A stretch of DNA of 40,107 nt, taken from NCBI RefSeq assembly GCF_001194135.2, contig NC_068994.1, forward strand, positions 41,807,732-41,847,838. Direction: 5' to 3'. The stretch is from Octopus bimaculoides. Lineage: Eukaryota. The notes under the pieces were generated by a model, which was not told the origin of the DNA, did no database searches, and saw nothing but the letters and a program-made list of their open reading frames with translations. Both the position numbers and the translations under genes were made by a program. Shown one piece after another: positions 8,514 through 39,399 of the stretch. How positions within the stretch are numbered: the stretch's first letter is position 1; each line of letters opens with the position of its first letter.

Positions 8514-8979
8514 NNNNNNNNNNNNNNNNNNNNNNNNNNNNNNNNNNNNNNNNNNNNNNNNNNNNNNNNNNNNNNNNNNNNNNNNNNNNNNNNNNNNNNN
8601 NNNNNNNNNNNNNNNNNNNNNNNNNNNNNNNNNNNNNNNNNNNNNNNNNNNNNNNNNNNNNNNNNNNNNNNNNNNNNNNNNNNNNNNNNNNNNNNNNNNN
8701 NNNNNNNNNNNNNNNNNNNNNNNNNNNNNNNNNNNNNNNNNNNNNNNNNNNNNNNNNNNNNNNNNNNNNNNNNNNNNNNNNNNNNNNNNNNNNNNNNNNN
8801 NNNNNNNNNNNNNNNNNNNNNNNNNNNNNNNNNNNNNNNNNNNNNNNNNNNNNNNNNNNNNNNNNNNNNNNNNNNNNNNNNNNNNNNNNNNNNNNNNNNN
8901 NNNNNNNNNNNNNNNNNNNNNNNNNNNNNNNNNNNNNNNNNNNNNNNNNNNNNNNNNNNNNNNNNNNNNNNNNNNNNNN

Positions 8980-16378: not shown

Positions 16379-17258
16379 TGAGGTGGCATCAAGAAGTTTG
16401 CAGACTTGTTCTGTAGCACGCCAATGGTTGTGTATGCAGTGAGAGATAGTAACCTTCATGGGGCAGTGTGCCAAGTGACATTGCTGTGTTTTCTTTGCAA
16501 GATGTGAAATTTGTACATTTGTGATCATGCATATACTGTAGTCTGCGATTTTGTCATGGACAAGAACAAAGAGCCAACATGAAATCTTGCGTTAAACTTA
16601 AGAAGTCTGCTAGAAAGACATTGAGCATGCTTCAGCAAGCTTACAGCAATGAAACAATGGGTCATATGCAATGTTTAGAGTGGCACAAGCACTTCAAAAG
16701 CAGAAGAAGGTCCATGTAAGATGATAAGCAATCTGGAAGACCTGCCACAAGTGCCACATCAAAAATGTAGTATTGTGCATCAAGAATTCATCCCCCAGGG
16801 CCAGACTGTTCTACTGCAATGCTTTGAAGCCTTTGAGGTCAGACATTCAGCAAAAGTGACTGGATCCGTGGGGCACGAAGAATTGGATTCTTTACAACGA
16901 CAATGCACCCTTTCACCAAGCTGTCCTCACTCATTTCTCAACATGGTATCACTTCTGCACCCGCCCTATTCACCAAATTTAGCACCTGCAGACATCCATC
17001 TTTTCCTCAAGACGAAAATGCGGCTCAAAAGTCACCATCTTAACACCACTGTCAAGATTCAGAGTCAGTCGCAGAAGGTCCTCAACTCACTTACAGAAAA
17101 TGAGTTGCAAGCTCAATTCCAAAACTGGCAGGAATGCTGGGACCGGTGTAGTGCTGAGCAAGGTGACTATTTCACAGGAAATGATGTTAAGACTTAAGTA
17201 AATAAGTAATATTTTAATTAAACATAACTAGTCTTGGAAATTTTTTGATACCATCTTG
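16379..17258 (+). mobile_element. Mariner (Tc1/mariner) DNA transposon, decayed, with internal deletion
   Basis: TA at 16377-16378 and degenerate ~29-bp TIRs (tgaggtggcatcaagaagtttgcagact / reverse complement caagatggtatcaaaaaatttccaagact). N-terminal HTH remnant EQRANMKSCVKL...EWHKHFK...DDKQSGRP. C-terminal remnant IVHQEFIPQGQTV...NDNAP...HPPYSPNLAPAD...WDRC...GDYF, with stops and frameshifts. Confidence 0.92.
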
Positions 17259-18848: not shown

Positions 18849-19534
18849 GGTTGAGCAGTAGTTTGAAAGTGTTAGTAAGGTTAGGGACAAAATATTTGGC
18901 TGCATTTGTATGTTGATGTCTCTTTTATCTTTTGGTAGTCATTATAATGAAGCATCACTTAAGACTTAGGTTAATATAACAGTCTGCACAACTATGCTAC
19001 ATCCCTATAAACATCTGTGCTGTCATGGCTAATTTAGAAATAATTATTAATAATCAAGCAAAATAAAATTAATCATCAGTCATCCTTATATTAACATTGC
19101 ATTAACTCAAAAGTTACATTTCAATATTCTCTTAATTACTGTTGTATTACACATTCATAAACATTTTGAAATATTTATTTGTAATAGTTTAGTCCCCAAA
19201 TAATGGACTGTGTTTCATTCTTCCTTTTTTTGCTTTTTTTCTCCTGGAAGTTGTATACCTTCTGTTCAGTCTCAGCTATTGAGAAACATAACAACTTTAA
19301 GAATATTGCATAATATATTTAATGAATGTGCAACCAAAGCATTCTTTTCAATTGCATATTTCTGATCTCCATCACTAAAAAGATATCTACCCTGTAACTG
19401 GCTGTTTTACACAAACAAAACCTTTTATGCTCTTCATGTAAATAAGGAAGGAAGGAAAAGTATAGGCATGGTTCTTGGGTTAAGTTCATCTTGCAACCAG
19501 GATGTCTGAGTATGATCACTCTACAAGGTATAAA

Positions 19535-21580: not shown

Positions 21581-21748
21581 TTAGAGCATACCTGCTATCT
21601 CTTCATACAGTCCGGTTTGTCCATCGCTCCATTTATGATGAGAGCCTAGATGAGTTGCGATTCTGTCACTCTGCTTGTGTGGAACCATACAAGTGCTCTC
21701 TTGAACTCCTTTCCCTCCAGCTGTCACAGCTACTTGCTGTACATATAT
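21581..21748 (-). CDS. PCDH: Protocadherin cytoplasmic exon 2 (IYVQQVAVTAGGKGVQESTCMVPHKQSDRIATHLGSHHKWSDGQTGLYEEIAGML*)
   Basis: Acceptor gttattacctAG|ATA at 21749/21748. Open in phase 0, matching the exon-1 donor. Ends either at donor CAG|GTATGC (21592, phase 1) or reads through to TAA at 21583-21581, with AATAAA at 21555-21550. Non-repetitive, higher-GC island. Not confirmed by transcript data. Confidence 0.7.
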   Translation of the reverse strand: MYVQQVAVTAGGKGVQESTCMVPHKQSDRIATHLGSHHKWSDGQTGLYEEIAGML

Positions 21749-21846
21749 CTAGGTAATAACATTATACAGAATAATGCTAGGTTTCAGGTAAGCAGAAAGA
21801 TAAATTCAACTACACTGCTGTAGCAGAAGTATGGTAAATTATCAAA

Positions 21847-22008
21847 GACAATGTGGTTGTGTGGTAAGAAGTTTGCTTCCCAACCACATGGTTCTGGGTT
21901 CAGTCGCAATGTGTGGCACCTTGGGCAAGTGTCTTGTACTATAGCTTCTGGCTGACCAAAGCCTTGTGAGTGGATTTGGTAGACAGAAAATGAAAGAAGC
22001 CCATCGTT

Positions 22009-22044
<36 letters not shown>

Positions 22045-22352
22045 CAGACACACACACATATATACACACACACACACACACATACACACATACACACACA
22101 TGTATGTATGTATTTATCTATGTGTGTGTGTGTCTTTGTGTCTGTATTTGTCCACTCATCACTGCTTGACAGCCAGTGTTGGTGTGTTTACGTCCCCATA
22201 ACCTAGCAGTTCGACAAAAGAGTCTGATAGAATAAGTACTAGGCTTTAAAAACAAATAAGTCCTGGGGTCGATTTGTTCAACTAAAACCCTTCAGCATGA
22301 CTGCAGTCAAATGACTGAAACATTTAAAAGAATTAAAACAATAAAAGAATAA
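21847..22352 (+). mobile_element. tRNA-derived SINE, family A, with expanded internal microsatellite
   Basis: Pol III A/B-box-like head, ccttgggcaagtgtct core and conserved 3' part. Lies about 100 bp from the exon-2 acceptor. Confidence 0.9.
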
Positions 22353-23859
22353 CTAAATATGACCTTCTGACATGGTAACAATGTTAATAAAATTTTGCAG
22401 CAATATTCATTTATCATAAATTCTATTGTTCATAATTTTTACATCATTTTGATATTTTAATGGAACTAAATCAAACAGATTATCAAGGACATATTAGTTT
22501 TGTATGTATGTGTGTATACATGTTTGTATGTGAGTGCATATAATTGTGCATGTTTGTTTGTTGAATTTGTGTATGAGTGCATTTGTATGTGTATGTATGC
22601 ATTCATATTGAGATTAGTTAAAAAATTATCTCCTCCCAATAGATAATATGTGAAAAAATTAAATACAATGATAGTGGAAAAATGAATTGTAAAATAATTA
22701 ATTAACTGTGATAACACTGGAAGATAGGACATGTTTTAGTTTCCATTGAAGCAGAGGAAATAAATACAACTCGGATATACATTGGCAGTTTCATTTGAAA
22801 TATTTTTGTCTGAATTCAATACAGCAGACCATGGCCACCAAGTCAGCCTACAAAACCAATGGCTCTAGTTTGAGGATGTTTACTGGAGCCAGAGAGGATG
22901 TTTTTGGCTAGAATGATCCTGAAGATGTTACATGCAGATTCACTCTAGAAAATGGTTTTGGAAACCAGGCCTTAACCCTATCCATGGCATGTTACAGGGT
23001 TCCTGAGTTAGGTTGGCCCCACTTGCAAGATCAAAAATACAAATTGATTTGTAGATTGAGATATAGAAACAAGAAAAAGGGGGAATGAGGAAGAGGGGGT
23101 GATTATGAGTCCTTTACAATTAAAAATTTCATCATCTTTATGAGAAATTATCTCATCCATCTGTTCTTTTTATGATAATTTTGTACATCATTAAAACTGA
23201 CCAACCCATTTCACTTGATTCCACTACCTTATCCTCTTCTATCTTATTGAGTGGGTATCCTTTCTCTATATTGCAGTTTAACGAGTGCCACCAACTCTGT
23301 GAGAAAGTACTTAAGGGTTTGATATTTTTCTTTTTTCATTCCCTTTCTCTTTTTAAAGTATTTTCTGTAAGTGCTATGGCCATCTTCATTCTTCAAGTCT
23401 ATTGCATACAGGCATGTGCTTCCCTTGGCTGTGGAACATAAAAAAAAAAAAAGTTCTAAGAATAATTTTCAAAGCAGATAAACTATAATAGCGGTAATTT
23501 ATAAGGTCAATTTAGTATAGAAAAAAATAACAAAGTATTTATCTCAGAAATCAATATATTTTGAAGAATATTCTGAAAAAATTTATATGTGTAAAGTAAT
23601 TGATTTACAATAAGTATAGTTAGTGGAAAAGCTAATTAATAATATTTCATTTCTGTATTTGATTTTGTAAACTCATGTGTTGGAATATATTTTATTTATC
23701 TCAAAAAGGTTTTTGGCTAATAATAAACACACACGCTGATTCTATTTCACTTCCCTATTATTCATCAGTTGGTTAATTATTTAACCAATTAATATTGATT
23801 ATTTGATTAACCATTTTTTCAGTCAGTTCATTCGCTAGGTTTGTCAAAGTTCTTTGACC

Positions 23860-23949
23860 ACCATTTGCAATCTCATCAATGACATGCCTTCTCTACTCTG
23901 GTTTGCTTCAGGAGAGAGACCATGTCATCAATGAGATTGAGCAAATGGT
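23860..23949 (-). other. 90-nt stem-loop within a ~270-bp imperfect palindrome (about 23765-24035)
   Basis: Outer stem of 9+8+8 Watson-Crick pairs, one 2-nt bulge, and a 2x2 position that is G-U/U-G on the minus strand. Confidence 0.8.
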
Positions 23950-24424
23950 AACTGACAAGCTTAACTGGTTGATTGATTGACTGAATGATTAATCAAACAA
24001 TCATTTAGTTAACTGGTTGATTAGTTAGCAATTGACAAATAAACAATAAAGAAATGAACTAGAACTAGTGCATGCATTCATTATTTGCAAAATTACTCTC
24101 CCAAGATTCAACAAAATAATTAGTAGTTATGATATCATTAATATTTACTGATTTCTTTTTAACTAAACTGCCAAAGCAATTTTAGCAAGGGATCATTGCA
24201 AACAACTAAATGGGTCAAAGTATATTGTTGGTGCTTTATCAACCACTCCAAAGCAAAGAAGGTAAATCTAATCTAGCCATGATCTCAAGTTGGAACCGTT
24301 CAGCTTCTAACTTTGTAACCATCATCACGGCTGGCTCACTCAGATCTATGTTAGTATGTTACATTAAATGCTTAAATAATAATTTGTAATATGGTTGCAA
24401 GCCCACAGAATCTTTGAGAAAGAA

Positions 24425-24590
24425 GAACGAATTAAATCAAGTCCACTAATTAAGTGGAAATGATTTCATAGAACACAGATGTATGAAAGGCATAGTTTGT
24501 TTCCAGCAGGACTTGAAATTCAGAATGTAAAAGAGTAAAATTATAGACCACAAAGCATTTCACATATTCTGTCTGTCATAATACTTTAAT
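24425..24590 (-). mobile_element. SINE family B, degenerate, inverted
   Basis: gacttgaaattcagaatgtaaa...accacaaagcattt corresponds to the inverted B-box region. Confidence 0.5.
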
Positions 24591-24684
24591 TGATTAAATA
24601 AAACTAAGTGTTTAATGGTCATAAATTAGTTCCTTTTAGGGGAAAAAAATGTAGTACATTAAATCAACTAAATATATTAGTTTA

Positions 24685-24893
24685 AAGTTTTGGTACACGA
24701 CCAGTAATTTCAGGGGAGAAGGTAAGCCAATTATATCGATTCCAGTGCTTAACTGGTACATATTTCTTCAACTCTGAAAGGATGAAAGCCAAAGTCAACC
24801 ACAGCAAAATTTGTACTCAGAATGTAAACACAAACAAAATTTTGCTAAAACTCTTTCCCAGTGTACTAAAGATTCTGCCAGCTTACTGCTTCA
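24685..24893 (-). mobile_element. SINE family B, inverted
   Basis: ccagtgcttaactggtac...aggatgaaagccaaagtcaac...tactcagaatgt...gattctgccagct. Confidence 0.85.
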
Positions 24894-25666
24894 CTCAACT
24901 TAGTATTTTGCTGGTACTTATATCTTATCAATACTGGGAAGCAAATATATCTAATCCAAGTGTATTCTGATATGTGAACAATCAGATACTATATTCTGAC
25001 ATGATTGTGATACAAGCAGTTTCAACAAAGATAGGTTGGATGAGTATATCCATTGTGATTTGTGGTAAGTTAACAAACCACTGCAGCCTTGGAATGACAA
25101 ATGAGAATTTGTTAGAAGCAAACTTTACAAGGCCTATTTCGTGTGTATGTAGACATAAGCACATGCATATATATATATTATGTATTTATATACGTGCACA
25201 CATACACATATATGTATGTGTATATTTCAGTATCTTTATAATCTAAAACTGTTGCACATAATGATAACACATCTCTGATGCTTTGACAATAAGTTGTGAT
25301 TTTGTAATTTCCATTATGCAGCTAATAATCATTCTTTGTTAATGAAATGTCAGTAAGATGATGTAATTAAAAACCTTATAAACAGTCTCCCACATTTTTT
25401 TTTCTGCAAGTAGTCTGTTAAACACCCAGTCTCTGGATTCATAATAAATGATACAAACACAGCAACAAGAATAGAAATACTCATAAATTTGTTGATACTA
25501 GTTATTGAATTGCACTAGAGGTGTGTATGTATGTATGTATGTATGTATGTATGTATGTATGTATGTATGTATNNNNNNNNNNNNNNNNNNNNNNNNNNNN
25601 NNNNNNNNNNNNNNNNNNNNNNNNNNNNNNNNNNNNNNNNNNNNNNNNNNNNNNNNNNNNNNNNNN

Positions 25667-25705
<39 letters not shown>

Positions 25706-26671
25706 CTGTATTTATGTCATGTTGCAAATATAAACAATTTAACCTTAAACTGAAGAGTTACATTGCACATTATTTTTAATCAAGTAGATATATATTAACT
25801 CTTACAAGGAAAATGTTGACAATGACTTCAAAGTTACAGTCAACCTTTCCCGTATAAAATTTATCATGCACACACATATATATATGTAAACATACATACA
25901 GGCACAGATACCGCCGTACACACACACACTTACATACATACATGCATACGTATAGATAGAGAGACAACACACATACATACATTCACAGATACATACATTC
26001 ACACATACATATATAATATATATAAATATATTATGTATATAGGTAAATCAGAAGTTATGGGCATATAACTAATGGGAGATAACTCATGTTGTTTGTTAGA
26101 ATCTTCAATGTCTTTACAAATTTATTTTGTCACTCCAATCGTTTACAAATATCTTCTTCCAGCACACTCATATTTAAGATTTTTTTGTTCTCAGACTCTT
26201 TTCCTGTTATCTACTTTACTCTAGCTTAACAGATAAGCACCTCATCCCTCCACTCACTTTCATTTTATTTCTTCTATTAATATTTGCTCGCTGTTGATCC
26301 TTTGACAATCTTTCACATTATCTCCTTATTTTAACTGCTAATAAATGCACATACATGTCTCATAATTATATGTGGATTTATGTTAATTATTCTCAAACTC
26401 AATACAAAGAATACAAAGAAGTTAAAACACATTATCATTTTGTTAAATATAATACAGTAGTCACTGTCATTATTATTATATTTCTCTTACAAAATTTTGA
26501 TATCAAAATGATTATCAGATAACTGAAATATATTTCTACCCTTTCTGAATTGTAAAATTCTGTTAATAATAAAAAGTCAGAAAATCTTATCGTGGGGAAA
26601 AGATGGGGCTGTAGAAAATATATGATGCACATTTGAGAGGGTTTGAACTATAATTTGGTCTTTACTGACAA

Positions 26672-26892
26672 TTAATACTTGTTTCTAATTTTGACAAAAG
26701 GATAGCAATTTTAATGGGAAGAGGTTAGCCAGTACCACCAGTCACAGTACTTGACTGGTACTTTGTTTTATCAGCCCATAAGAATGGGAGGCAGTGAATT
26801 TGACCTTTGCAGGATTTGAACTCAGAATGTGTGGAGTTGAAACAAGCACTGTAAGGTATTTTCTCCTACACTTTAATGATTCTGCTAATCTA
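26672..26892 (-). mobile_element. SINE family B, inverted
   Basis: cagtacttgactggtac...ggatttgaactcagaatgt...aatgattctgcta. Confidence 0.8.
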
Positions 26893-27597
26893 ATACACTG
26901 ATATTACCAGCAAATTGATAATGTTATGTGTATGTGTGTGTATGTGTGTGTGTGTGTGTGTGTGACTTAGATCTCATAATTAAAAAGAATAATTAATTAT
27001 AATTTCTGGAATCAAAATTACCTTTTGTTTTGAGCAATTTTATGAAATAACATTAAATACATATCAGCAAGCTGCTTCTTCGTTATCCTGGTTTCTTAAT
27101 GAGCTTAGATAACATTATAGCTACAGGAAGCATGTTTCTAAAGAGATATTTCACGCATAGCATGATACCATGTTTTGTTCTCTGCCATATTTATTTCTGA
27201 TAAGTACGGTTTACCAAAAGTGCCACAGCAGCTGGCCACATTGATAGGCGCCCCTGTGAAACATTCATGTTGTTATTGGAAGAGATGGAAGCTTAACAAT
27301 CATCTGCTTATTGAATCAGAAACTAAAGAGAAACTCCCTGCTTACATAGTCAATGAAGAAATTTTATTTTTATTTCAAATTCAAGCTAGATGTCTAATTT
27401 GAAAACACCTGAAACCATGTGTAAAACAGTTCAACTTGATATTGATTACAGTTCTAATTAGTCTAATTAGTGATAAATAAATACAATAATAATAATAATT
27501 AGTTACATTGATAACGTTTCACTTGGTATGATTTTTAATATTTCCTCTATCTCCTTACCTAATCACAATAAGGATGGTGAGTATAATAATAATAATG

Positions 27598-27641
<44 letters not shown>

Positions 27642-27642
<1 letters not shown>

Positions 27643-27757
27643 TTGACCCAGAAGGGATGAAAAGCAAAGTTAACCTCGGTGAAATTTGAACTCAGAATAT
27701 AAAGACAGATTAAATGCCACAAGGCATCCTACAATTCTCCCAGCTCACCACCTTAAT
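27642..27757 (-). mobile_element. SINE family B, inverted, shortened, with long (ATT)n at 27580-27642
   Basis: ggatgaaaagcaaagttaacctcggtgaaatttgaactcagaat...ccagctcaccacctta. Confidence 0.8.
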
Positions 27758-27801
27758 CCTGAAAAATACCAAAACTCGTTTCTAACAAGTACTATTAATA
27801 A

Positions 27802-28011
27802 TTAAAGCCAATGCATGAGCTGCTATGTGATCATTTGACATGTTAGAAATAACAGCGAAATCTCCCTCAAAATACTTCCCACCATATTAGTAAAGGATAA
27901 TTAGGTATTGGGTTTTAGGTTTCCTGCACAGGTGTAAAAAAAGAGGATAGTCATAAGCGGAACATCTTGATCAACAGCACTGACTTGGGGCTAAACAACA
28001 ACAAAAACAAC
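27802..28011 (+). repeat. Probable interspersed repeat ending in ggggctaaa(CAA)n
   Basis: Retroposon-like simple-repeat tail, with a similar tail remnant near 20976-21005. Otherwise single-copy in the window. Confidence 0.45.
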
Positions 28012-28296
28012 CAGTAATAGCAAGGAGTCGTATGGCAAGTATTGAAAATATAATTCAGGAAAGAAGACAGTTATAATTAGCAGTTAGATGTATCATTGTA
28101 TTTGGCTAGAAGTTTTTCGGGTGTTTTTTTTTTTTACCCCAGGAGGATGAAACCATGTGAGGATGAACTTGAAACATTAAAAAGATGTATCTAAATATCC
28201 TCAAAATATTTTGTCTGATAATACACTGAATCAACCAATCAATCATGAATAATACAGTAGTATGAAATATATATATGCGTGTGTATACACATATGC

Positions 28297-28341
<45 letters not shown>

Positions 28342-29099
28342 TGTGTGTATACATAGTTTTTGTTATGGGAAAATGTTTGGTTTGATAAGTTGTAAGGTGG
28401 GTTACACCAAATTACCTTCTTTTACTGTTTTCAGTTTTAAAGTTTTTCAATGTATTTGATCTGGTCTTTTTTGGAGATGGTAGGGTATGAAGTAATTTAA
28501 GGGCATTATGGCATATCTGTATATTTCTATTGAAGAAAGCTTTGTTGCACGTAAGGAATGATTTCAGAAAAGATTTTGATTATGTTGGATATGATTACTG
28601 CAGGATGTATTCATGAATTGGGTATTTTTTTGCTTTTCATTTAATTTAAAATTTTACTTCCTCTGCAAGACAGAAAAATTAGCAATTTTCTTCAACACAC
28701 AAAACACTCTTATCTTCACAGTGTTTTTGTTTCCATGCAGACACAAAGCTACTTTTAACTGATACATACACTCAGTCTTCCACACAACATCCTATAACAA
28801 CCGTACTACCCCTATTATTCACTTCTTGACCCATCAAAATATCAATAAATATAAGCACCAAAATGTGTATGTGTGATATGCATGTGTGTGTCTGTAAGGA
28901 CTTCTTGTCTGCATTTAAGTATAAATATATATATATATATTTGTTTTGCAAGATTTTTGATGTGAAATCGTGTGTTGAAACAGATGTTGTTGTACTTGGG
29001 GATGGTCATATTGCCAGTTTAGCCAATAAAAACACACGCACTGTATATTTGGTGTTAATTTGCTTCAGCTTTATATTACATTAATCTTAATCTTATTTC

Positions 29100-29144
29100 G
29101 GCCAGAGTTCTTTCGTCACACTTCTGTGACCTCATCAGTGGTCC
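29100..29144 (-). ncRNA. Minimal type I hammerhead ribozyme motif (Penelope-like-element type)
   Basis: Minus strand reads GGACCA-CUGAUGA-G-GUCACA(GAAG)UGUGAC-GAAA-GAAC-UC-UGGCC. Catalytic core intact, 6-bp stem II, 5-bp stem I with one bulge, vestigial stem III. Confidence 0.65.
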
Positions 29145-29181
29145 TTTGTTTCCTTCCTTCTTATGTGTGTCTCACCTTGCT

Positions 29182-29221
29182 AAATATCAGCCATTTTGTA
29201 TTTACAAAATGGCTGATATTT
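29182..29221. repeat. Perfect 19-bp inverted repeat with 2-nt spacer, ending at a gap edge
   Basis: aaatatcagccattttgta-tt-tacaaaatggctgatattt, then N. Confidence 0.95.
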
Positions 29222-29729
29222 NNNNNNNNNNNNNNNNNNNNNNNNNNNNNNNNNNNNNNNNNNNNNNNNNNNNNNNNNNNNNNNNNNNNNNNNNNNNNNN
29301 NNNNNNNNNNNNNNNNNNNNNNNNNNNNNNNNNNNNNNNNNNNNNNNNNNNNNNNNNNNNNNNNNNNNNNNNNNNNNNNNNNNNNNNNNNNNNNNNNNNN
29401 NNNNNNNNNNNNNNNNNNNNNNNNNNNNNNNNNNNNNNNNNNNNNNNNNNNNNNNNNNNNNNNNNNNNNNNNNNNNNNNNNNNNNNNNNNNNNNNNNNNN
29501 NNNNNNNNNNNNNNNNNNNNNNNNNNNNNNNNNNNNNNNNNNNNNNNNNNNNNNNNNNNNNNNNNNNNNNNNNNNNNNNNNNNNNNNNNNNNNNNNNNNN
29601 NNNNNNNNNNNNNNNNNNNNNNNNNNNNNNNNNNNNNNNNNNNNNNNNNNNNNNNNNNNNNNNNNNNNNNNNNNNNNNNNNNNNNNNNNNNNNNNNNNNN
29701 NNNNNNNNNNNNNNNNNNNNNNNNNNNNN

Positions 29730-29772
<43 letters not shown>

Positions 29773-30943
29773 TATGGATGCTTATGCACTCTTATCTACC
29801 TGTGTACCTGCATTTAGAAATAATTATGCTAACACATTCCTGCATAAGAAGAGAGTGTCTGCAGAAATTGTGAAGAATAATTACTCCAAGTTATTTTTGT
29901 GCACCTGCACCAAATTATTGGGTTTGTTATCAATATACATCAACAACTTAATATACATACATACATACATACGCACTCACATATATACATACATACATGT
30001 ATATATGTATGCATATATGTATATATATATGTAGACATGCATACAAATATATTCATATATATATATTTGTATGTATGCACACATCAATATATTTCTTTGC
30101 CTATTAGTTGTAAAAAAGAAATGTGTGTAAGGTCTATTTTCAAATTGAGTTCTATTTCTCCTCTTTCTAACACTGTGTTTGGACATGCAAGTGTGTGTAC
30201 ATACACATGTGTGCATGCATGAGTGCATACATGTGTATTGGTGAGTATGTGAGTATTTGTAACATCTACTTGCAATGTGCATCCACACGGTTTCTGTCTA
30301 GCAAATACCACTTACACAGCATTAATCAACTCATAGCTATTGTAGAGAACTCTTGTTCCAAGGAACCAAGCAGTGGGATTGACCACGTGGTTGAATATGA
30401 ATATCTTAACTACACAGATAGCCATGTTTTAAAGTTTTAAAGAAGTAAAATAGTACAATTAGTCATTCAAAGAAATGTTTGATAAATGGCAGCATGTAAA
30501 TATCAATACAAATTCTTGCCTAAATGAGCTTTAAACACAATTTAAATTCCAGCAATATTTATTTTCCTTACACTTTGAAATTTTACTGATTCAATGATGT
30601 TTATTCCGGCAGAATAAAAGAACTAACGATTCATTTATAAATGTAATTATATTTCATTTTCCATTTGTTTTAAAAATTGGACTGTGGCTATGTAGGAACA
30701 ATGCCTTTAAGACTTTTAGTTGACCGAAATGACCCATGTGCCTATTTTAAAGTTTAGTGCTCATGCTATTGATGCCTTTTGTTAAGTTACAGGAACATAG
30801 ACAAAACGTTTGAGATTCTCAAAAGATGGGTGACGCAACCACAAACACACACACTCACACTTATATATATATATATATATATTTACGTATGTAAGTATCT
30901 ATCTATCTATATATATACACACATTTATATATATATATATATG

Positions 30944-30982
<39 letters not shown>

Positions 30983-30984
30983 GA

Positions 30985-31148
30985 TGGGCTTTATGGGCTT
31001 CCACGCAGTTTCTGTCTATTAAATACATACACAAGGCATTAATAGGCCTGGGGCTAGAATAGAAGGTATTTTCTCAAACAACTGCCTTGCAGTGGGACTG
31101 AACCTGAAAACATATGTTTGTAAAGCAAGCTACTTTACCACACAACCA
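30985..31148 (-). mobile_element. SINE family A, 5' half, inverted
   Basis: Reverse complement reads gacatggttgtgtggtaaagtagcttgc...ggttcagtcccactgc...gacagaaactgcgtggaagccc. Confidence 0.8.
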
Positions 31149-31324
31149 TGTCTGAAAAAAAGTCATGAATAGCTGATTAACTAATACTAAACATAAAGGA
31201 AAGTATTTTGATTAACAAAGTAAGTTTAAATAACTGAATCATAATTTGTCATTCAATTTAATTAAAAATTAGAAATTAGAAAATTAAGCACTTAATTATT
31301 TTGTTGATTACTTTAATAATTACT

Positions 31325-31545
31325 TTCTTCTTTTTACTTGTCTTAGTCATTGGACTGCAGGCATGCTGGAGCATCATCTTGAAGGGTTTTAGTCAATCAG
31401 ATTAACTTTGGTACTTTTTTTTTTTGTTTTTTGCCTGGTACATATCTTAACAATTTCACCTGCCAAATAACTATGTTGTGTGGATATAAACAAACCAACA
31501 CCTGTTGTCAAGTGCTGGTGGAGGACAAACACAAAGACACACATA
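31325..31545 (-). mobile_element. SINE family A, 3' half, inverted; continues into microsatellite and gap
   Basis: Reverse complement reads gtgtctttgtgtttgtcc...cttgacaac..gtgttggtttgttta...gactaaaacccttcaag...ccagcatg..tgcagt..aatgact. Confidence 0.8.
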
Positions 31546-32372
31546 TATATATATATATAAATATATATATATATATGTATATATATGTATATTGCATATA
31601 TGTATATGTATATATATACATACATACATATATATATATATATAAATATACATACATACANNNNNNNNNNNNNNNNNNNNNNNNNNNNNNNNNNNNNNNN
31701 NNNNNNNNNNNNNNNNNNNNNNNNNNNNNNNNNNNNNNNNNNNNNNNNNNNNNNNNNNNNNNNNNNNNNNNNNNNNNNNNNNNNNNNNNNNNNNNNNNNN
31801 NNNNNNNNNNNNNNNNNNNNNNNNNNNNNNNNNNNNNNNNNNNNNNNNNNNNNNNNNNNNNNNNNNNNNNNNNNNNNNNNNNNNNNNNNNNNNNNNNNNN
31901 NNNNNNNNNNNNNNNNNNNNNNNNNNNNNNNNNNNNNNNNNNNNNNNNNNNNNNNNNNNNNNNNNNNNNNNNNNNNNNNNNNNNNNNNNNNNNNNNNNNN
32001 NNNNNNNNNNNNNNNNNNNNNNNNNNNNNNNNNNNNNNNNNNNNNNNNNNNNNNNNNNNNNNNNNNNNNNNNNNNNNNNNNNNNNNNNNNNNNNNNNNNN
32101 NNNNNNNNNNNNNNNNNNNNNNNNNNNNNNNNNNNNNNNNNNNNNNNNNNNNNNNNNNNNNNNNNNNNNNNNNNNNNNNNNNNNNNNNNNNNNNNNNNNN
32201 NNNNNNNNNNNNNNNNNNNNNNNNNNNNNNNNNNNNNNNNNNNNNNNNNNNNNNNNNNNNNNNNNNNNNNNNNNNNNNNNNNNNNNNNNNNNNNNNNNNN
32301 NNNNATACATACACACACAGAGATATATACATACATTAAAAACATAGTTTCAATGTTATGTATGTGTATGTG

Positions 32373-32412
<40 letters not shown>

Positions 32413-33962
32413 TATATATTTCTATATATGTATATATGTATGTATGAGATCATATGTATATGTTTTTTACTTCATCAGTATACAGTAACTAATTCTTATC
32501 TTCATATACCCCAAAATGTGTGTGCAAATGTGTGTATCTGTATGTGTGTATTTTAGCGGTGTTTGTGACTAAATCTTGTTTGTGTGTTTTTGCAAGAAGG
32601 TTTGTTCAATAATTTAGTATTTATTAGAGTAATTTCAGTTTTCGATTATGCATGTACTAGCTATATATGTATCATGCAAAATACATGCCATGCTAACCAA
32701 TGAATGATATAATATCTTGAATAACTAATACATATATTCAACTATAAGTATTTTAAACTTTAAATCTTGTCACAATGTATTAGTTAATAAAGAGAGATAC
32801 CACACTTCCATTTGAATGCTACTGCAGTACACATTTTTAAACAATTCTAATTGATTAAAAAGTACTTAACCAATTATATCATTTCCTTAATCCTTAATTC
32901 AAATAATAATATTTCCATAAATCATATTTTAAAATTTTTTAATGATTTTATTGATAAAAATATTAGAAATGGGGTGAAAAATGGGGTTGGTCGTTATGCA
33001 TTTTCTAAAAATGGCAGACCGTTGTAGACAATAATGTTTTTAGGTAGTGATTGATGGTTTTACTAAGTCGCTCTTTCATCTTTCAAAAGCTGAGATCAAT
33101 GACTTATGTTTCATGGTATGTGTTTGGTTGATGAATAATATTGAAATAAATTAGTTTTTTGCAGGAGACATTGTGTCTTAATCCCATCTTCTCTGCATTA
33201 TTAGATGATTCACACTTATATTTTTAACTTTCTTTCATTCACACACACACACACACACACACATACATATATACATATATATGTGTATGTGTGTGTGTGT
33301 GCATGTGTGTATGTATATATATNNNNNNNNNNNNNNNNNNNNNNNNNNNNNNNNNNNNNNNNNNNNNNNNNNNNNNNNNNNNNNNNNNNNNNNNNNNNNN
33401 NNNNNNNNNNNNNNNNNNNNNNNNNNNNNNNNNNNNNNNNNNNNNNNNNNNNNNNNNNNNNNNNNNNNNNNNNNNNNNNNNNNNNNNNNNNNNNNNNNNN
33501 NNNNNNNNNNNNNNNNNNNNNNNNNNNNNNNNNNNNNNNNNNNNNNNNNNNNNNNNNNNNNNNNNNNNNNNNNNNNNNNNNNNNNNNNNNNNNNNNNNNN
33601 NNNNNNNNNNNNNNNNNNNNNNNNNNNNNNNNNNNNNNNNNNNNNNNNNNNNNNNNNNNNNNNNNNNNNNNNNNNNNNNNNNNNNNNNNNNNNNNNNNNN
33701 NNNNNNNNNNNNNNNNNNNNNNNNNNNNNNNNNNNNNNNNNNNNNNNNNNNNNNNNNNNNNNNNNNNNNNNATATATATATATATATACATACATATATA
33801 TATATTATGTTTTTTTAAATTTTTACCCATAATATTGTTTGTTCTAGTGTTTTGTTAAAAAGAAAAGTACCAGCCAGATACTGAGTTTTGTCACCACCAT
33901 CCCCCACACCAAAATAGTTATTCAAGATCATAAGGATATAAGTGTGCATTATTTGTTGTTAC

Positions 33963-36356
33963 CTGCTTGGTACTTGGTAGCTTTGTGGCTAAGGTCGAAG
34001 TTTTCCAGTCATTCTGAGAGACATCATCAGAATAGAGTTGACTCCTTAATCCTACCAACTGAATATTCCTGTTTCTCATTTCACTGGGACTTTTGGGAAT
34101 GACAACAGAACTATCCGTTTGGTTGATCAATTGTCTTCTTTCACTGCGAGAGTTCAATGAGGGATTCATTACTTCAACTCCTCCTCCTTGTGCTGCATTT
34201 CTCGCTCTATTACATCGTATTATGCATGTTGCTATAGACACCACTACAGCTATAGATACAATCATGGCCACTAACACTATTACTATTGCAAAATCTACTT
34301 CAACCATTTCATTCAAATTTTTGTTTATGGCAGGCATAATCCTAGAAGTCTTATTGCTGACAGTCAGCGTCAAAGTCACTGTTGTCATTGCAGATAAGAC
34401 TGGTGTTCCACTATCTTTGACAATAAATTCTAAATTATAAGATCCAACATCATCTTGGTAAACTGGACGAGAAAAAGATAAAACTCCAGTGTAAGGATTC
34501 ACACTAAACAAATGTTTGTCATTGCCTCTGAGTATTTCATATTTGAGAAAAGCATTTGTCCGGCTGTCTCTGTCAAAGGCTTTCAGAACTGTGATATTAG
34601 TTTTTTTGTTGGGATAATAATGGACATCAAGACTAAAAGGGTTAACACTGGGAAAAGAAAAGTACGGGGCATTGTCATTCTCGTCCATTACTTCGATGAA
34701 AACATTTGCTGTGTTATTAAAAGAAGGTTTACCATTGTCTTTGACAAAAACTTGGAATTTGTAAATGTTTTTAATTTCATGATCCAATGGTTTTCTTGTA
34801 GAAATAAATCCATAATTTGTGATCTGGAAAGGAAAATTATATTTATTATTGGTCAAAAGGGAATAGGTCAGTTGACCTCCTTGTCCTAAATCGGGATCAG
34901 TAGCATTGATAAAACCAATGGGAAAATTAGCTTTTTTATTTTCATAAGTCAAAAACTTGAATGTTGATTTCGTGAATTTTGGTTGTACATCATTGACATC
35001 CATGACTTGGATAGAGAATTTTCTTTTAGTTTGTAATGAAGGAGAACCTTGATCCTCACAGGAAATAGTTATATCGTAGTGGTCCTGAACTTCCCTATCA
35101 ACTGGATCCTTTAAATTTACTTTGTATTCTTTTGATTCCAACATTAAAAGCTGAAATTTATCATGGTGAAGTTCACAGGTTACCTCACCATTAAGTCCAA
35201 TGTCATTATCAGTGACCATGACATATGCAATGAAGCTACCAACATCAGTATCTTCTGAGATAGTTGCTGAGCTCTCACTAACGGGAGACACAAAATTGAC
35301 ATCAATACTTGGATAATTGTTTTGTTGGTTGATAATATTTACAAGAACCAGAGCAGCTGAGCTCAATGGTGGTTTTCCTTTGTCAGTTGCTCGCACATAT
35401 AATTCATTGAGGAGTTTATTTCTTAGTGGGAAAATTTGCTGCAAGTAGATCTCACCAGTTCTTTCATTTAGCATGAAATGACTTTTAGTTGATGCAGCAG
35501 TCTTTGAACTGAAATGATAAGAAACCTTACCATTATCACCTGAGTCTAAATCAGTTGCTGTTAATGTAATAATTGGCATCATTCTGCTTGCTTTGTTCTT
35601 GGTGGTAATGTTATAAACCTTTCGTAAAAAAACTGGAGTATTGTCATTAACATCAGTAACTGTTACTTTGACAATTAAAACACTTTCTTTGGGTGGTAAA
35701 CCACCATCTTTAGCTACAATCTCAAGAACATATTTATCTTGCTTTTCTCTGTCTAATTTTTCTTTTAAGAAAATTGAAAGTTCTGATATTCCATCGACAC
35801 TTTTGGAAGTCGATAATGCAAATGGATTATCTATATTATTTCCAAGGTGGTAGCTTATTTGAGAATTCTGGAGCCCAACATCTCTGTCAATTGCATTTGG
35901 GATTGATCGTCGCACTCCAATGCTAGCATCTTCTGAAAACTGAATGTTAATCTCTTCATCTTTAAATTTTGGTTGGTGATCATTGATGTCTTGAATAACA
36001 ACACGCACTTTTAAAATCTTTATAAATGCTTTTGCTTGTTGAATGGCAATTTTTATGGTTTTGAAACATTCTTGATTATATGAACAAAGTGTATCACTAT
36101 CAAGTGTCTGAGCAGTATATATTTTTCCTGATTTTGTGACATTGAATAATTGAGAATTTTGAGTGACACTGCGTTGAAATTGACTGAAAGTTACCTTACT
36201 TCGGTCAGTCAGTAAATTGCTATCATATAAATGCATATCTACAGCAATATCCCCAAGGTAAGTCCCTTCTTCTTCTCCTTCTTTCACATAATATGTAAAG
36301 TCTATACACAGGCAGTAGTGTAAGTATAACAAGCAAATGCCAAAATTTAGCTGCAT
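33963..36356 (-). CDS. PCDH: Protocadherin, large ectodomain exon (signal peptide, EC1-EC6, TM, proximal cytoplasmic tail; aa 1-798)
   Basis: 812-codon ORF. Signal peptide MQLNFGICLLYLHYCLC. EC1 has the protocadherin Cys-X5-Cys (CSYNQEC). Cadherin motifs include DINDHQP, LDRE, DVNDNTP, DVNDVQP, LDHE, DENDNAP and repeated DxD/KDxG. TM at about aa 689-713. An in-frame stop lies 15 nt before the ATG. A phase-0 donor CAG|GTAACA follows Q798; unspliced, the ORF runs to a stop at 33918. The symbol is family-level only, no orthologue assigned. Confidence 0.96.
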
Positions 36357-38968: not shown

Positions 38969-39041
38969 CATGTTTCTGAGTCTTTGATTGTCATCAGCCA
39001 TGCTAGTCCACACTGATGATGAGCAAAGATACAGAAACATG
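38969..39041 (+). other. 73-nt stem-loop
   Basis: 24 Watson-Crick and 3 G-U pairs over 29 positions on the plus strand, with a 15-nt loop. Confidence 0.8.
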
Positions 39042-39399
39042 TATCTGGATGCAGGCTTAGCTGGGTGGAGGTGCTTGTCTTCCCTTTGTAAACATAAGGA
39101 CACAGGAAATGTGTCAAGGACGACAGGAAGCGGAGCAGCTTCCTAGGTCTAACCAACAGTAGTATTATTCCTCTCAGGGGACTGTCACATTAAGTTGACA
39201 GTATTCAATACAATTAGTTTAGAATGGGTTAATAATCCTGCTTCACTTCTCAGGTAGTGTTAGTATTAAAAGGGAAGCATTTATCCAAAAGGAAAGACAT
39301 CCAAAATTTCTGAAAAATTACAGAAACGATCGGTGTTTATTTTAAATAACAAAAATAAAGTAACATAGCTGTATTCAAAGATATATCATCAGTGTCATA

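What the first reader, a model, noticed from the sequence alone, without database searches (positions are those of the whole stretch)
29100..29144. Hammerhead ribozyme motif on the sense strand of the protocadherin intron
Seen (minus): stem I 5' GGACCA; core CUGAUGA (29138-29132); one extra G; stem II GUCACA-GAAG-UGUGAC; GAAA (29114-29111); GAAC; UC; stem I 3' UGGCC. Predicted cleavage is 3' of C29105 (CUC triplet). Established: Penelope-like elements and metazoan retrozymes carry minimal type I hammerheads that lack a stable stem III and typically cleave as dimers through a palindromic loop III. Here AGAACU is one change from the palindrome AGAUCU. Inference: a PLE-derived self-cleaving motif is co-transcribed with a neural recognition gene. 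If active, it could cut the pre-mRNA between exons 1 and 2 and bias isoform choice. It may equally be an inert TE relic.
Basis: partly seen in the sequence, partly recalled or inferred. Interest (0 to 1): 0.8.

Follow-up and report, generated by a model that had tools for sequence, protein, structure and literature searches.

The report
Transposon-derived hammerhead relic in intron
A complete minimal hammerhead-ribozyme motif, of the kind carried by Penelope-like retrotransposons, lies on the sense strand of an Octopus bimaculoides protocadherin intron, but it sits in a non-conserved repeat fragment, is probably nearly inactive, and shows no sign of a host function.

Summary
It has every invariant hammerhead core base, a 5-bp helix I with one bulge, a 6-bp helix II, and a one-pair helix III. 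A structural descriptor finds it once in the window; 1 of 1000 composition-matched simulations gives any hit.

Its extra G after A9, its G10.1-C11.1 pair, its long helix II and its short helix I match the published signature of Penelope-like-element (PLE) minimal hammerheads. No Rfam hammerhead model detects it.

The window is Octopus bimaculoides chromosome CM046614.1. The motif lies in the ~12-kb intron of a protocadherin gene, on the sense strand, upstream of both alternative 3' exons.

The 281-bp block that carries it is flanked by (TA)n and by an assembly gap. It is absent from the orthologous intron of O. sinensis and O. vulgaris. Partial copies occur elsewhere in the genome. Loop III is not palindromic, so the dimer helix these ribozymes need is weak (-2.0 versus -6.4 kcal/mol). 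No partner copy is assembled.

Verdict: an ordinary, probably inert transposon relic. The proposed regulation of protocadherin isoforms is unsupported.

The parts
29100..29144 (-). Minimal type-I hammerhead motif. Helix I 5' strand 29144-29139 (A29142 bulged); core CUGAUGA 29138-29132; extra G 29131; helix II 29130-29125 / 29120-29115 with loop GAAG 29124-29121; GAAA 29114-29111; loop III GAAC 29110-29107; U16.1 C17 29106-29105; helix I 3' strand 29104-29100. Predicted cut between 29105 and 29104.
   Evidence: Direct reading. Only descriptor hit in the window, against 0.001 expected. Helices I and II are kept in the ensemble.
28941..29221 (-). Assembled part (281 bp) of the repeat-derived block that carries the hammerhead. 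The 3' end abuts (TA)n; the 5' end runs into the assembly gap.
   Evidence: The flanks align to O. sinensis (L001) and O. vulgaris (L005), but this block has no counterpart there. Partial copies exist elsewhere in O. bimaculoides: L007:32905-32949, 85% over 46 nt, and the first 22 residues of gene model P0128.
29182..29221 (.). Perfect inverted repeat with 19-nt arms (29182-29200 / 29203-29221) and a 2-nt spacer. The outer arm begins at the contig edge. It may be the junction of a head-to-head inverted second copy hidden in the gap.
   Evidence: the repeat finder I1, 100% complementary; self-BLAST. The head-to-head reading is inference, based on PLE architecture described in PMC8557442 and PMC4209133.
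29222..29729 (.). Assembly gap (508 N) immediately 5' of the block on the minus strand. It hides the element's 5' end and any partner copy.
   Evidence: The same gap is present in GCA_001194135.2.
28925..28940 (.). (TA)n microsatellite at the 3' junction of the block. The far side of the gap (29730-~29770) is also TA-rich microsatellite.
   Evidence: The orthologous microsatellite in O. vulgaris and O. sinensis holds different insertions.
33963..36356 (-). Protocadherin exon 1 (799 codons). Donor CAG|GTAACA, with GT at 33962-33961.
   Evidence: tblastn with P0001, and the splice-site read-out. Cadherin Pfam domains are recorded on the homologues.
23399..23428 (-). Alternative terminal coding exon of isoform X2 (PREAHACMQ*), downstream of the hammerhead.
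   Evidence: The P0125 tail located in the window.
21581..21748 (-). Terminal coding exon of isoform X1 (55 codons + stop), acceptor ...CCTAG|ATA, downstream of the hammerhead.
   Evidence: tblastn 100% identity. The gene range in L003 maps to window 36356..21581.

Best explanation
The motif is the ribozyme of a short fragment of a Penelope-like retroelement, or of a non-autonomous, retrozyme-like derivative of one. The fragment lies in a (TA)n microsatellite inside the protocadherin intron of Octopus bimaculoides.

In its native setting, such a minimal type-I hammerhead is thought to process multimeric element transcripts. Two copies pair through the palindromic 15.x/16.x/loop-III segment to build the missing helix III. 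Cleavage then follows 3' of C17, leaving a 2',3'-cyclic phosphate and a 5'-OH.

Here the copy is solo in the assembled sequence and its loop III has lost the palindrome. It may also be paired with an inverted copy hidden in the gap, which would lock it into a long duplex. It is therefore transcribed passively with the intron, cleaves very slowly or not at all, and is discarded with the lariat. It has no role in protocadherin expression.

Shown: the motif, its architecture, its intronic sense location, its absence from two sister species, and partial copies elsewhere. Inferred: PLE parentage, lack of activity, and the inverted partner.
For: 1. Motif and core are complete and far beyond chance.

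2. It carries features that Cervera & de la Pena (PMC4209133) report as emergent hallmarks of PLE minimal hammerheads:
- a nucleotide between A9 and 10.1 (G29131);
- a G10.1-C11.1 pair (G29130-C29115);
- a long helix II (6 bp);
- complementary 15.2/16.2 (G29110/C29107).

3. The same paper says most such motifs are solo copies from truncated PLEs. It also says pairs 100-700 bp apart on opposite strands occur. The 19-nt perfect inverted repeat at the contig edge fits that pattern.

4. The block sits in a microsatellite. A microsatellite insertion bias is documented for several PLE clades (PMC8557442).

5. The block is absent from the collinear introns of O. sinensis and O. vulgaris. In those species the same microsatellite holds other insertions.

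6. The block is repetitive: L007:32905-32949 and the P0128 N-terminus.

7. A second hammerhead of the same architecture lies in another O. bimaculoides protocadherin intron. It reads CUGAUGA-A-GAGC-GUAG-GCUC-GAAACGUC, is antisense to the gene, and sits between (CT)n and (GT)n (L007:33170..33125). That makes 2 hits in ~180 kb, against ~0.005 expected.

8. PLEs are a recognised, partly young component of octopus genomes (PMC13282606).

9. The dimer helix III is predicted at -2.0 kcal/mol, against -6.4 for the palindromic form. Single PLE min-hammerheads showed no detectable cleavage in vitro.
Against: - No PLE reverse-transcriptase or GIY-YIG reading frame was found next to the motif, or anywhere in ~290 kb of non-gap octopod sequence. 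This was judged by eye from ORF listings, not by a profile search.
- The element's 5' part is hidden in the gap, so PLE parentage rests on ribozyme architecture and insertion context only.
- No full-length second copy of the 281-bp block was recovered, so there is no family consensus and no covariation test.
- No Rfam hammerhead model scores the motif.
- Activity was not measured. PLE hammerheads might be helped by host factors in vivo (PMC4209133 discussion). The gap could hide a direct rather than an inverted partner.
- With only two octopus lineages alignable, gain in O. bimaculoides cannot be distinguished from loss in the vulgaris/sinensis lineage.
Confidence: 0.72

Rival explanations
1. 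An active, host-relevant intronic ribozyme. The motif cleaves the nascent protocadherin pre-mRNA, alone or with a partner copy hidden in the gap. This lowers spliced X1/X2 mRNA in favour of the unspliced 812-aa read-through form, as a species-specific regulatory novelty.
For: The core is intact and on the sense strand of the intron. Helices I and II are favoured in context. Domesticated intronic hammerheads exist in amniotes (PMC6155905). The 508-nt gap could hide a second copy.
Against: - The motif is not conserved in two congeners.
- Loop III is non-palindromic, so the dimer helix is weak.
- The contig-edge palindrome points to an inverted partner, not a direct one. That would give antisense RNA rather than a second ribozyme.
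- PLE min-hammerheads are very slow in vitro.
- Slow intronic hammerheads do not block splicing.
- Both alternative 3' exons are downstream.
- A second such motif lies antisense in another protocadherin intron, as expected for random TE debris.
- Retrozymes are reported as depleted from introns, implying selection against genic insertion rather than co-option (bioRxiv 10.64898/2026.07.22.740005 abstract).
Confidence: 0.05
2. A chance hammerhead look-alike in ordinary intronic or microsatellite-associated DNA, with no ribozyme ancestry.
For: No Rfam hit. Folding stability is not exceptional (z = -0.98). No PLE ORF is nearby. A genome of more than 2 Gb would hold some tens of chance hits to a relaxed descriptor, by extrapolation.
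Against: - Expected 0.001 hits per window, and none of 1000 simulations with a 6-bp helix II.
- The motif also has the G10.1-C11.1 pair and complementary 15.2/16.2, neither of which the descriptor required. It has the optional extra nucleotide after A9 as well.
- It lies in a repeat-derived, lineage-specific block.
- A second motif of the same architecture was found in 180 kb.
Confidence: 0.08
3. A unit of a non-LTR retrozyme, meaning a tandem ~170-400-bp repeat expressed as small circular RNA, rather than a truncated autonomous PLE. The neighbouring units would be collapsed into the assembly gap.
For: A type-I hammerhead with a one-pair helix III capped by a tetraloop is the architecture of newt/axolotl retrozyme ribozymes (PMC7229834). 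Tandem repeats commonly break short-read assemblies, and a gap abuts the element. Retrozymes are proposed to be PLE derivatives anyway.
Against: - No direct repeat of the block is present in the assembled sequence.
- What is seen at the gap edge is an inverted repeat, not a direct one.
- The 3' end joins (TA)n, not another unit.
- The extra nucleotide after A9 and the long helix II are described for PLE min-hammerheads, not for canonical retrozyme ribozymes with a 4-bp helix II and loop-loop contacts.
Confidence: 0.12

Closest known systems
Minimal hammerheads (min-HHRs) of metazoan Penelope-like elements (Cervera & de la Pena 2014, PMC4209133)
   Same: - Type-I topology and a complete catalytic core.
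- An unpaired nucleotide between A9 and 10.1, and a G10.1-C11.1 pair.
[quoted passage not shown]
- Essentially no helix III, and complementary 15.2/16.2.
- Occurrence as a solo motif in a truncated repeat, possibly with an inverted neighbour.
   Different: Loop III (GAAC) is not palindromic. Helix II is 6 bp rather than the 7-8 bp of the Schistosoma families (6 bp in D. virilis). No pLTR or RT-EN frame could be shown next to it. The host (a cephalopod) did not turn up in the papers found here.
Newt/axolotl satellite hammerheads (HHR_Amex1) of non-LTR retrozymes (PMC7229834)
   Same: Helix III is a single base pair capped by a tetraloop. The ribozyme is expected to need a dimer for efficient cleavage.
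   Different: Those have a palindromic tetraloop, a 4-bp helix II with conserved loop 1-loop 2 contacts, and sit in long tandem arrays. None of these is seen here.
Conserved intronic hammerheads of amniotes (RECK, CTCL, DTNB introns; Rfam HH9/HH10; de la Pena & Garcia-Robles 2010, cited in PMC6155905)
   Same: A type-I hammerhead on the sense strand of an intron of a protein-coding gene, thought to derive from retroelement ribozymes.
   Different: Those are canonical and conserved across classes of vertebrates, and Rfam has models for them (HH9/HH10). This one is absent from congeners, lacks helix III and scores with no Rfam model.
Hammerheads with an extra nucleotide between A9 and G10.1 (De la Pena & Flores 2001, cited in PMC4209133; I recall it as the CChMVd plus-strand ribozyme)
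   Same: An extra residue at the same core position is tolerated in a natural, active hammerhead.
   Different: That is a viroid type-III ribozyme with stable helices. The identity of the extra base and its kinetic effect are recalled from memory, not tested here.

Membership tests
Hammerhead ribozyme (general) | Invariant core: C3 U4 G5 A6 N7 G8 A9 / G12 A13 A14 / A15.1-U16.1 / H17 | tested here: met
   CUGAUGA 29138-29132; GAA 29114-29112; A29111; U29106; C29105.
Hammerhead ribozyme (general) | Three helices around the core | tested here: inconclusive
   Helix I (5 bp + bulge) and helix II (6 bp) form, with pair probabilities 0.6 and 0.9. Helix III is a single A-U pair in the monomer. An intermolecular AGAACU x AGAACU helix is worth only -2.0 kcal/mol.
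Hammerhead ribozyme (general) | Mg2+-dependent self-cleavage 3' of H17 | not testable with these tools
   Needs in vitro transcription or end-mapping.
Rfam hammerhead families (RF00163 Hammerhead_1, RF00008, RF02275-7) | Covariance-model score at or above the gathering threshold | tested here: not met
   No hammerhead family was listed at gathering threshold, nor at E<=10 on 423 nt or 76 nt.
PLE minimal hammerhead (Cervera & de la Pena 2014) | Unpaired nucleotide between A9 and 10.1 | tested here: met
   G29131; feature listed in PMC4209133.
PLE minimal hammerhead (Cervera & de la Pena 2014) | G10.1-C11.1 closing pair, long helix II (6-8 bp), short helix I (about 4-5 bp; 2 bp in D. virilis) | tested here: met
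   G29130-C29115; helix II 6 bp; helix I 3+2 bp.
PLE minimal hammerhead (Cervera & de la Pena 2014) | Palindromic 15.2-16.2 and loop III, allowing a dimeric helix III | tested here: not met
   G15.2/C16.2 are complementary, but the central AA is not. AGAACU gives two A-A mismatches in the homodimer.
PLE minimal hammerhead (Cervera & de la Pena 2014) | Location in the pseudo-LTR of an element encoding RT and a GIY-YIG endonuclease, or in a truncated copy of one | tested here: inconclusive
   No RT/EN frame was recognised by eye in ORF listings of the window or of ~290 kb of non-gap octopod sequence. The element's 5' part is in a gap. The repeat status, microsatellite context and edge palindrome fit a truncated or inverted PLE copy.
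Non-LTR retrozyme | Head-to-tail tandem repeats (~170-400 bp), each with a type-I hammerhead | tested here: not met
   No direct repeat of the block is present in the assembled sequence. The gap leaves a loophole.
Domesticated intronic hammerhead (amniote HH9/HH10 type) | Conservation at the orthologous intronic position across species | tested here: not met
   Absent from the collinear introns of O. sinensis L001 and O. vulgaris L005.

The most novel reading that the evidence does not exclude
A young transposon-borne hammerhead, present only in O. bimaculoides, is catalytically competent in vivo. It would be helped by a partner copy in the unsequenced gap or by host factors. It would sever the nascent transcript of one protocadherin gene upstream of both 3' exons, giving a species-specific change in the output of a neural recognition gene. 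That would be an early stage of the domestication seen for the amniote intronic hammerheads.
Probability: 0.04. Interest if true: 0.55.

Novelty: new member of a known kind. Interest (0 to 1): 0.15.

Why it matters
If the motif were active, it would be an example of a retroelement ribozyme caught while being co-opted into a cephalopod neural gene. As it stands, it mainly shows two things. First, PLE-type minimal hammerheads occur in octopus genomes and escape all Rfam models. Second, they land in microsatellites within protocadherin introns in either orientation, like any other repeat. This is useful for annotation, but it does not change what is known about hammerheads, PLEs or protocadherin regulation.

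Tried and rejected
- **Rfam searches.** Gathering and permissive thresholds on the window, on 423 nt and on 76 nt gave no hammerhead hit.
- **Other copies in the window or loci.** Self-BLAST of the element against the window found no other copy, only the edge palindrome. BLAST against ~290 kb of non-gap octopod loci found only a 46-nt partial copy in L007.
- **Translated copies in the protein collection.** A chimeric six-frame peptide of the element found one hit, P0128. Its locus is not on record. Its relatives are SAP-domain repeat proteins whose normal N-terminus is different, so P0128 is a chimeric gene model. The idea that the hammerhead sits upstream of that ORF family was dropped. Pfam gave nothing for P0128.
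- **Metagenome scan.** An exact-pattern scan of metagenome contigs for the ribozyme gave 0 hits.
- **Filling the gap.** The window is the current O. bimaculoides assembly itself, with the same gaps, so this failed.
- **Lost look-ups.** Four look-ups returned no locus: three found no gene on record (P0128, P0126, P0121) and one gene range was too long (P0012).
- **PLE reading frames.** ORF listings of all loci showed LINE-like and mariner-like remnants but nothing recognisable as PLE RT/EN.
- **Supplements.** The supplementary files of the two key PLE papers are not held.
- **Fold stability as evidence.** z = -0.98, which is uninformative for so small a motif.

Full report
**1. The observation**

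On the minus strand the window reads GGACCA-CUGAUGA-G-GUCACA-GAAG-UGUGAC-GAAA-GAAC-UC-UGGCC from 29144 down to 29100. In hammerhead numbering:
- C3-A9 are 29138-29132.
- G12 A13 A14 are 29114-29112.
- A15.1 is 29111, U16.1 is 29106 and C17 is 29105.

The scissile bond would therefore be 29105|29104.

Helix I is A-U, C-G and C-G, then a bulged A29142, then two G-C pairs. Helix II is six Watson-Crick pairs closed by GAAG. Helix III is a lone A-U pair around GAAC.

I wrote a descriptor for this architecture. It found only this site on either strand of the window. It hit one of 1000 first-order-Markov simulations of equal size, and none with a helix II of six pairs. In the 281 nt of assembled context the ensemble keeps helix II (pair probability ~0.9) and helix I (~0.6). 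The 45-mer is not unusually stable overall (z = -0.98), which says little for so small a motif. No Rfam hammerhead model registers, at the gathering threshold or at E<=10 on 423 or 76 nt.

**2. Where it is**

The 812-codon frame at 33918-36356 (minus strand) is a protocadherin. Its best relative is O. sinensis protocadherin-17 X1, at 98% identity. The cluster of that protein contains O. bimaculoides XP_014777315.1. That protein's locus in GCA_001194135.2 (CM046614.1) is 100% identical to the window, assembly gaps included. The window is therefore O. bimaculoides.

Gene structure:
- Exon 1 ends at 33963 (CAG|GTAACA).
- The X1 terminal exon is 21748-21581.
- The X2 alternative terminal exon (PREAHACMQ*) is 23428-23399.

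The motif therefore lies in the ~12-kb intron, on the sense strand, 4.8 kb from the donor. It is upstream of both alternative 3' exons. A cut there could not favour one annotated isoform over the other. At most it would reduce both.

**3. What carries it**

The orthologous loci of O. sinensis (L001) and O. vulgaris (L005, gapless) are collinear with the window at 82-97% identity. Window 30309-29745 and 28940-28164 align on either side. The block 29221-28941 that holds the motif has no counterpart in either species. In those species the interval is a (TA/CA)n microsatellite with other insertions, including a tRNA-derived SINE-like sequence in O. vulgaris.

In the window the block's 3' end abuts (TA)n. 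Its 5' end runs into a 508-N gap, beyond which TA repeats resume.

The last 40 nt before the gap are a perfect inverted repeat with 19-nt arms, and the outer arm starts at the contig edge.

The block is repetitive:
- A 46-nt stretch of its 3' part recurs at 85% identity in L007:32905-32949.
- Its translation matches 22 of 24 residues at the start of the O. bimaculoides gene model P0128.
- P0128's relatives have a different, SAP-domain N-terminus. P0128 is therefore a chimeric model whose first exon comes from another copy of this repeat.

With only two alignable lineages, I cannot say whether O. bimaculoides gained the block or the vulgaris/sinensis lineage lost it. Either way it is not conserved.

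**4. What kind of hammerhead**

Cervera & de la Pena (PMC4209133) described minimal hammerheads in the pseudo-LTRs of Penelope-like elements and, massively, as solo motifs from truncated copies. Their features, none demanded by the authors' own descriptor, were:
- a nucleotide between A9 and 10.1;
- a conserved G10.1-C11.1 pair;
- palindromic 15.2-16.2 and loop III.

The octopus motif has the extra G29131, G29130-C29115, a 6-bp helix II, a 5-bp helix I and complementary G15.2/C16.2. Only the two central As of AGAACU break the palindrome.

The same paper reports pairs of such motifs 100-700 bp apart on opposite strands. Craig et al. (PMC8557442) describe inverted 5'-truncated copies next to PLE insertions, a microsatellite insertion bias, and the assembly problems these cause. 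The edge palindrome, the gap and the (TA)n context all fit. The mirrored copy is an inference: it would lie around 29259-29303 on the plus strand.

PLEs, including young ones, are annotated in octopus genomes (PMC13282606).

A second motif of the same build lies at L007:33170-33125. It reads CUGAUGA-A-GAGC-GUAG-GCUC-GAAACGUC-AAAG, with the extra nucleotide, the G-C closing pair and a palindromic ACGU. It sits between (CT)n and (GT)n, antisense in the intron of another O. bimaculoides protocadherin gene. That is two hits in ~180 kb of O. bimaculoides sequence, against about 0.005 expected.

Still missing is a reverse-transcriptase or GIY-YIG frame next to either motif, or anywhere in the loci fetched, and a family consensus.

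**5. How it most likely behaves**

These ribozymes lack helix III and are thought to act as dimers. Single Schistosoma PLE motifs showed no detectable cleavage, and dimers cleaved only weakly. One-pair-helix-III amphibian ribozymes also need dimers (PMC7229834).

Here the intermolecular helix III is predicted at -2.0 kcal/mol, against -6.4 (AGAUCU) or -6.2 (AGUACU) for the palindromic forms. No second sense copy is assembled. If the gap does hold an inverted copy, the intron RNA would fold into a long perfect hairpin that buries the ribozyme strand.

Even a slow cut should matter little. Transcripts whose intron is cleaved by a slow hammerhead are still spliced, through exon tethering (Dye et al. 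and Bentley and co-workers, as summarised in PMC2995048).

A recent preprint finds animal retrozymes to be PLE derivatives that are depleted from introns, which points to selection against genic insertion rather than to co-option.

The best-supported reading is therefore a passively transcribed transposon relic that is inactive or nearly so.

**6. Comparison, novelty and verdict**

The closest known thing is the PLE minimal hammerhead. The motif meets the core and three of the four signature features. It fails loop-III palindromy, and the pseudo-LTR location test is inconclusive. It is not a member of any Rfam hammerhead family by score. It is not a tandem retrozyme in the assembled sequence. 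It fails the conservation test that defines the domesticated amniote intronic hammerheads (PMC6155905).

My literature searches found hammerheads reported in a cephalopod only as 235 Rfam Hammerhead_1 hits in the giant squid (PMC6962438), and no description of PLE-type minimal motifs in octopus. It is therefore a new member of a known kind.

Interest is low (0.15). The residual novel reading, a young and active species-specific intronic ribozyme affecting a protocadherin, gets about 4%.

Noticed in passing
L007:33125-33170 (minus strand), O. bimaculoides CM046614.1: A second PLE-type minimal hammerhead: CUGAUGA-A-GAGC-GUAG-GCUC-GAAACGUC-AAAG. It has an extra nucleotide after A9, a G-C closing pair and a palindromic ACGU. 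It sits between (CT)n and (GT)n, antisense in the intron of another protocadherin gene. A 46-nt partial copy of the target element's tail lies ~220 nt away on the other strand (32905-32949).
   Followed up: partly
L001:32830-33090 (minus strand); window 38973-39204; L005:29228-29488: A ~260-bp repeat family. Its O. sinensis copy fits a canonical type-I hammerhead descriptor: helix I 6 bp, helix II 4 bp (U-A at 10.1/11.1), helix III 2 bp + tetraloop. None of 600 simulations gave a hit of this quality. That copy is an insertion with an ~11-bp target duplication, absent from the O. bimaculoides orthologous site (window 19176-19186). The O. vulgaris orthologue has helix II broken. The window holds a 75%-identical degenerate copy plus an adjacent inverted fragment.
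   Followed up: partly
L005:17975-18370 (O. vulgaris) and L001:18950-20390 (O. sinensis): The same intronic microsatellite that holds the hammerhead block in O. bimaculoides carries different insertions in the other two species. O. vulgaris has a tRNA-derived SINE-like element. O. sinensis has an element bounded by a ~45-bp direct repeat. The site looks like an insertion hot spot.
   Followed up: partly
L001:28203-29262 and 29353-30359 (O. sinensis): The ~1.1-kb segment containing the last coding exon of the protocadherin gene is tandemly duplicated in O. sinensis; the exon is found twice at 100% protein identity. It is single in O. bimaculoides (window 22109-21048).
   Followed up: no
window 16568-17197 (plus strand): Remnant of a mariner/Tc1-like transposase frame (...HPPYSPNLAPADIHLF...). 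It is shared with O. sinensis (L001:34904-35480). Pfam gave no hit for the 158-aa ORF.
   Followed up: partly
P0128 (UniRef A0A0L8I3J7, O. bimaculoides): A gene model whose first 22 residues derive from another copy of the hammerhead-bearing repeat. They are fused to a multi-copy SAP-domain / CNC-motif protein family, probably itself transposon-encoded, that is abundant in O. bimaculoides.
   Followed up: partly
window, 15 runs of N (e.g. 1673-2356, 8514-8979, 29222-29729, 31661-32304): Nearly all assembly gaps are bordered by TA or CA microsatellites. Repeat insertions in such microsatellites, like the one studied here, are systematically under-assembled in this genome.
   Followed up: no
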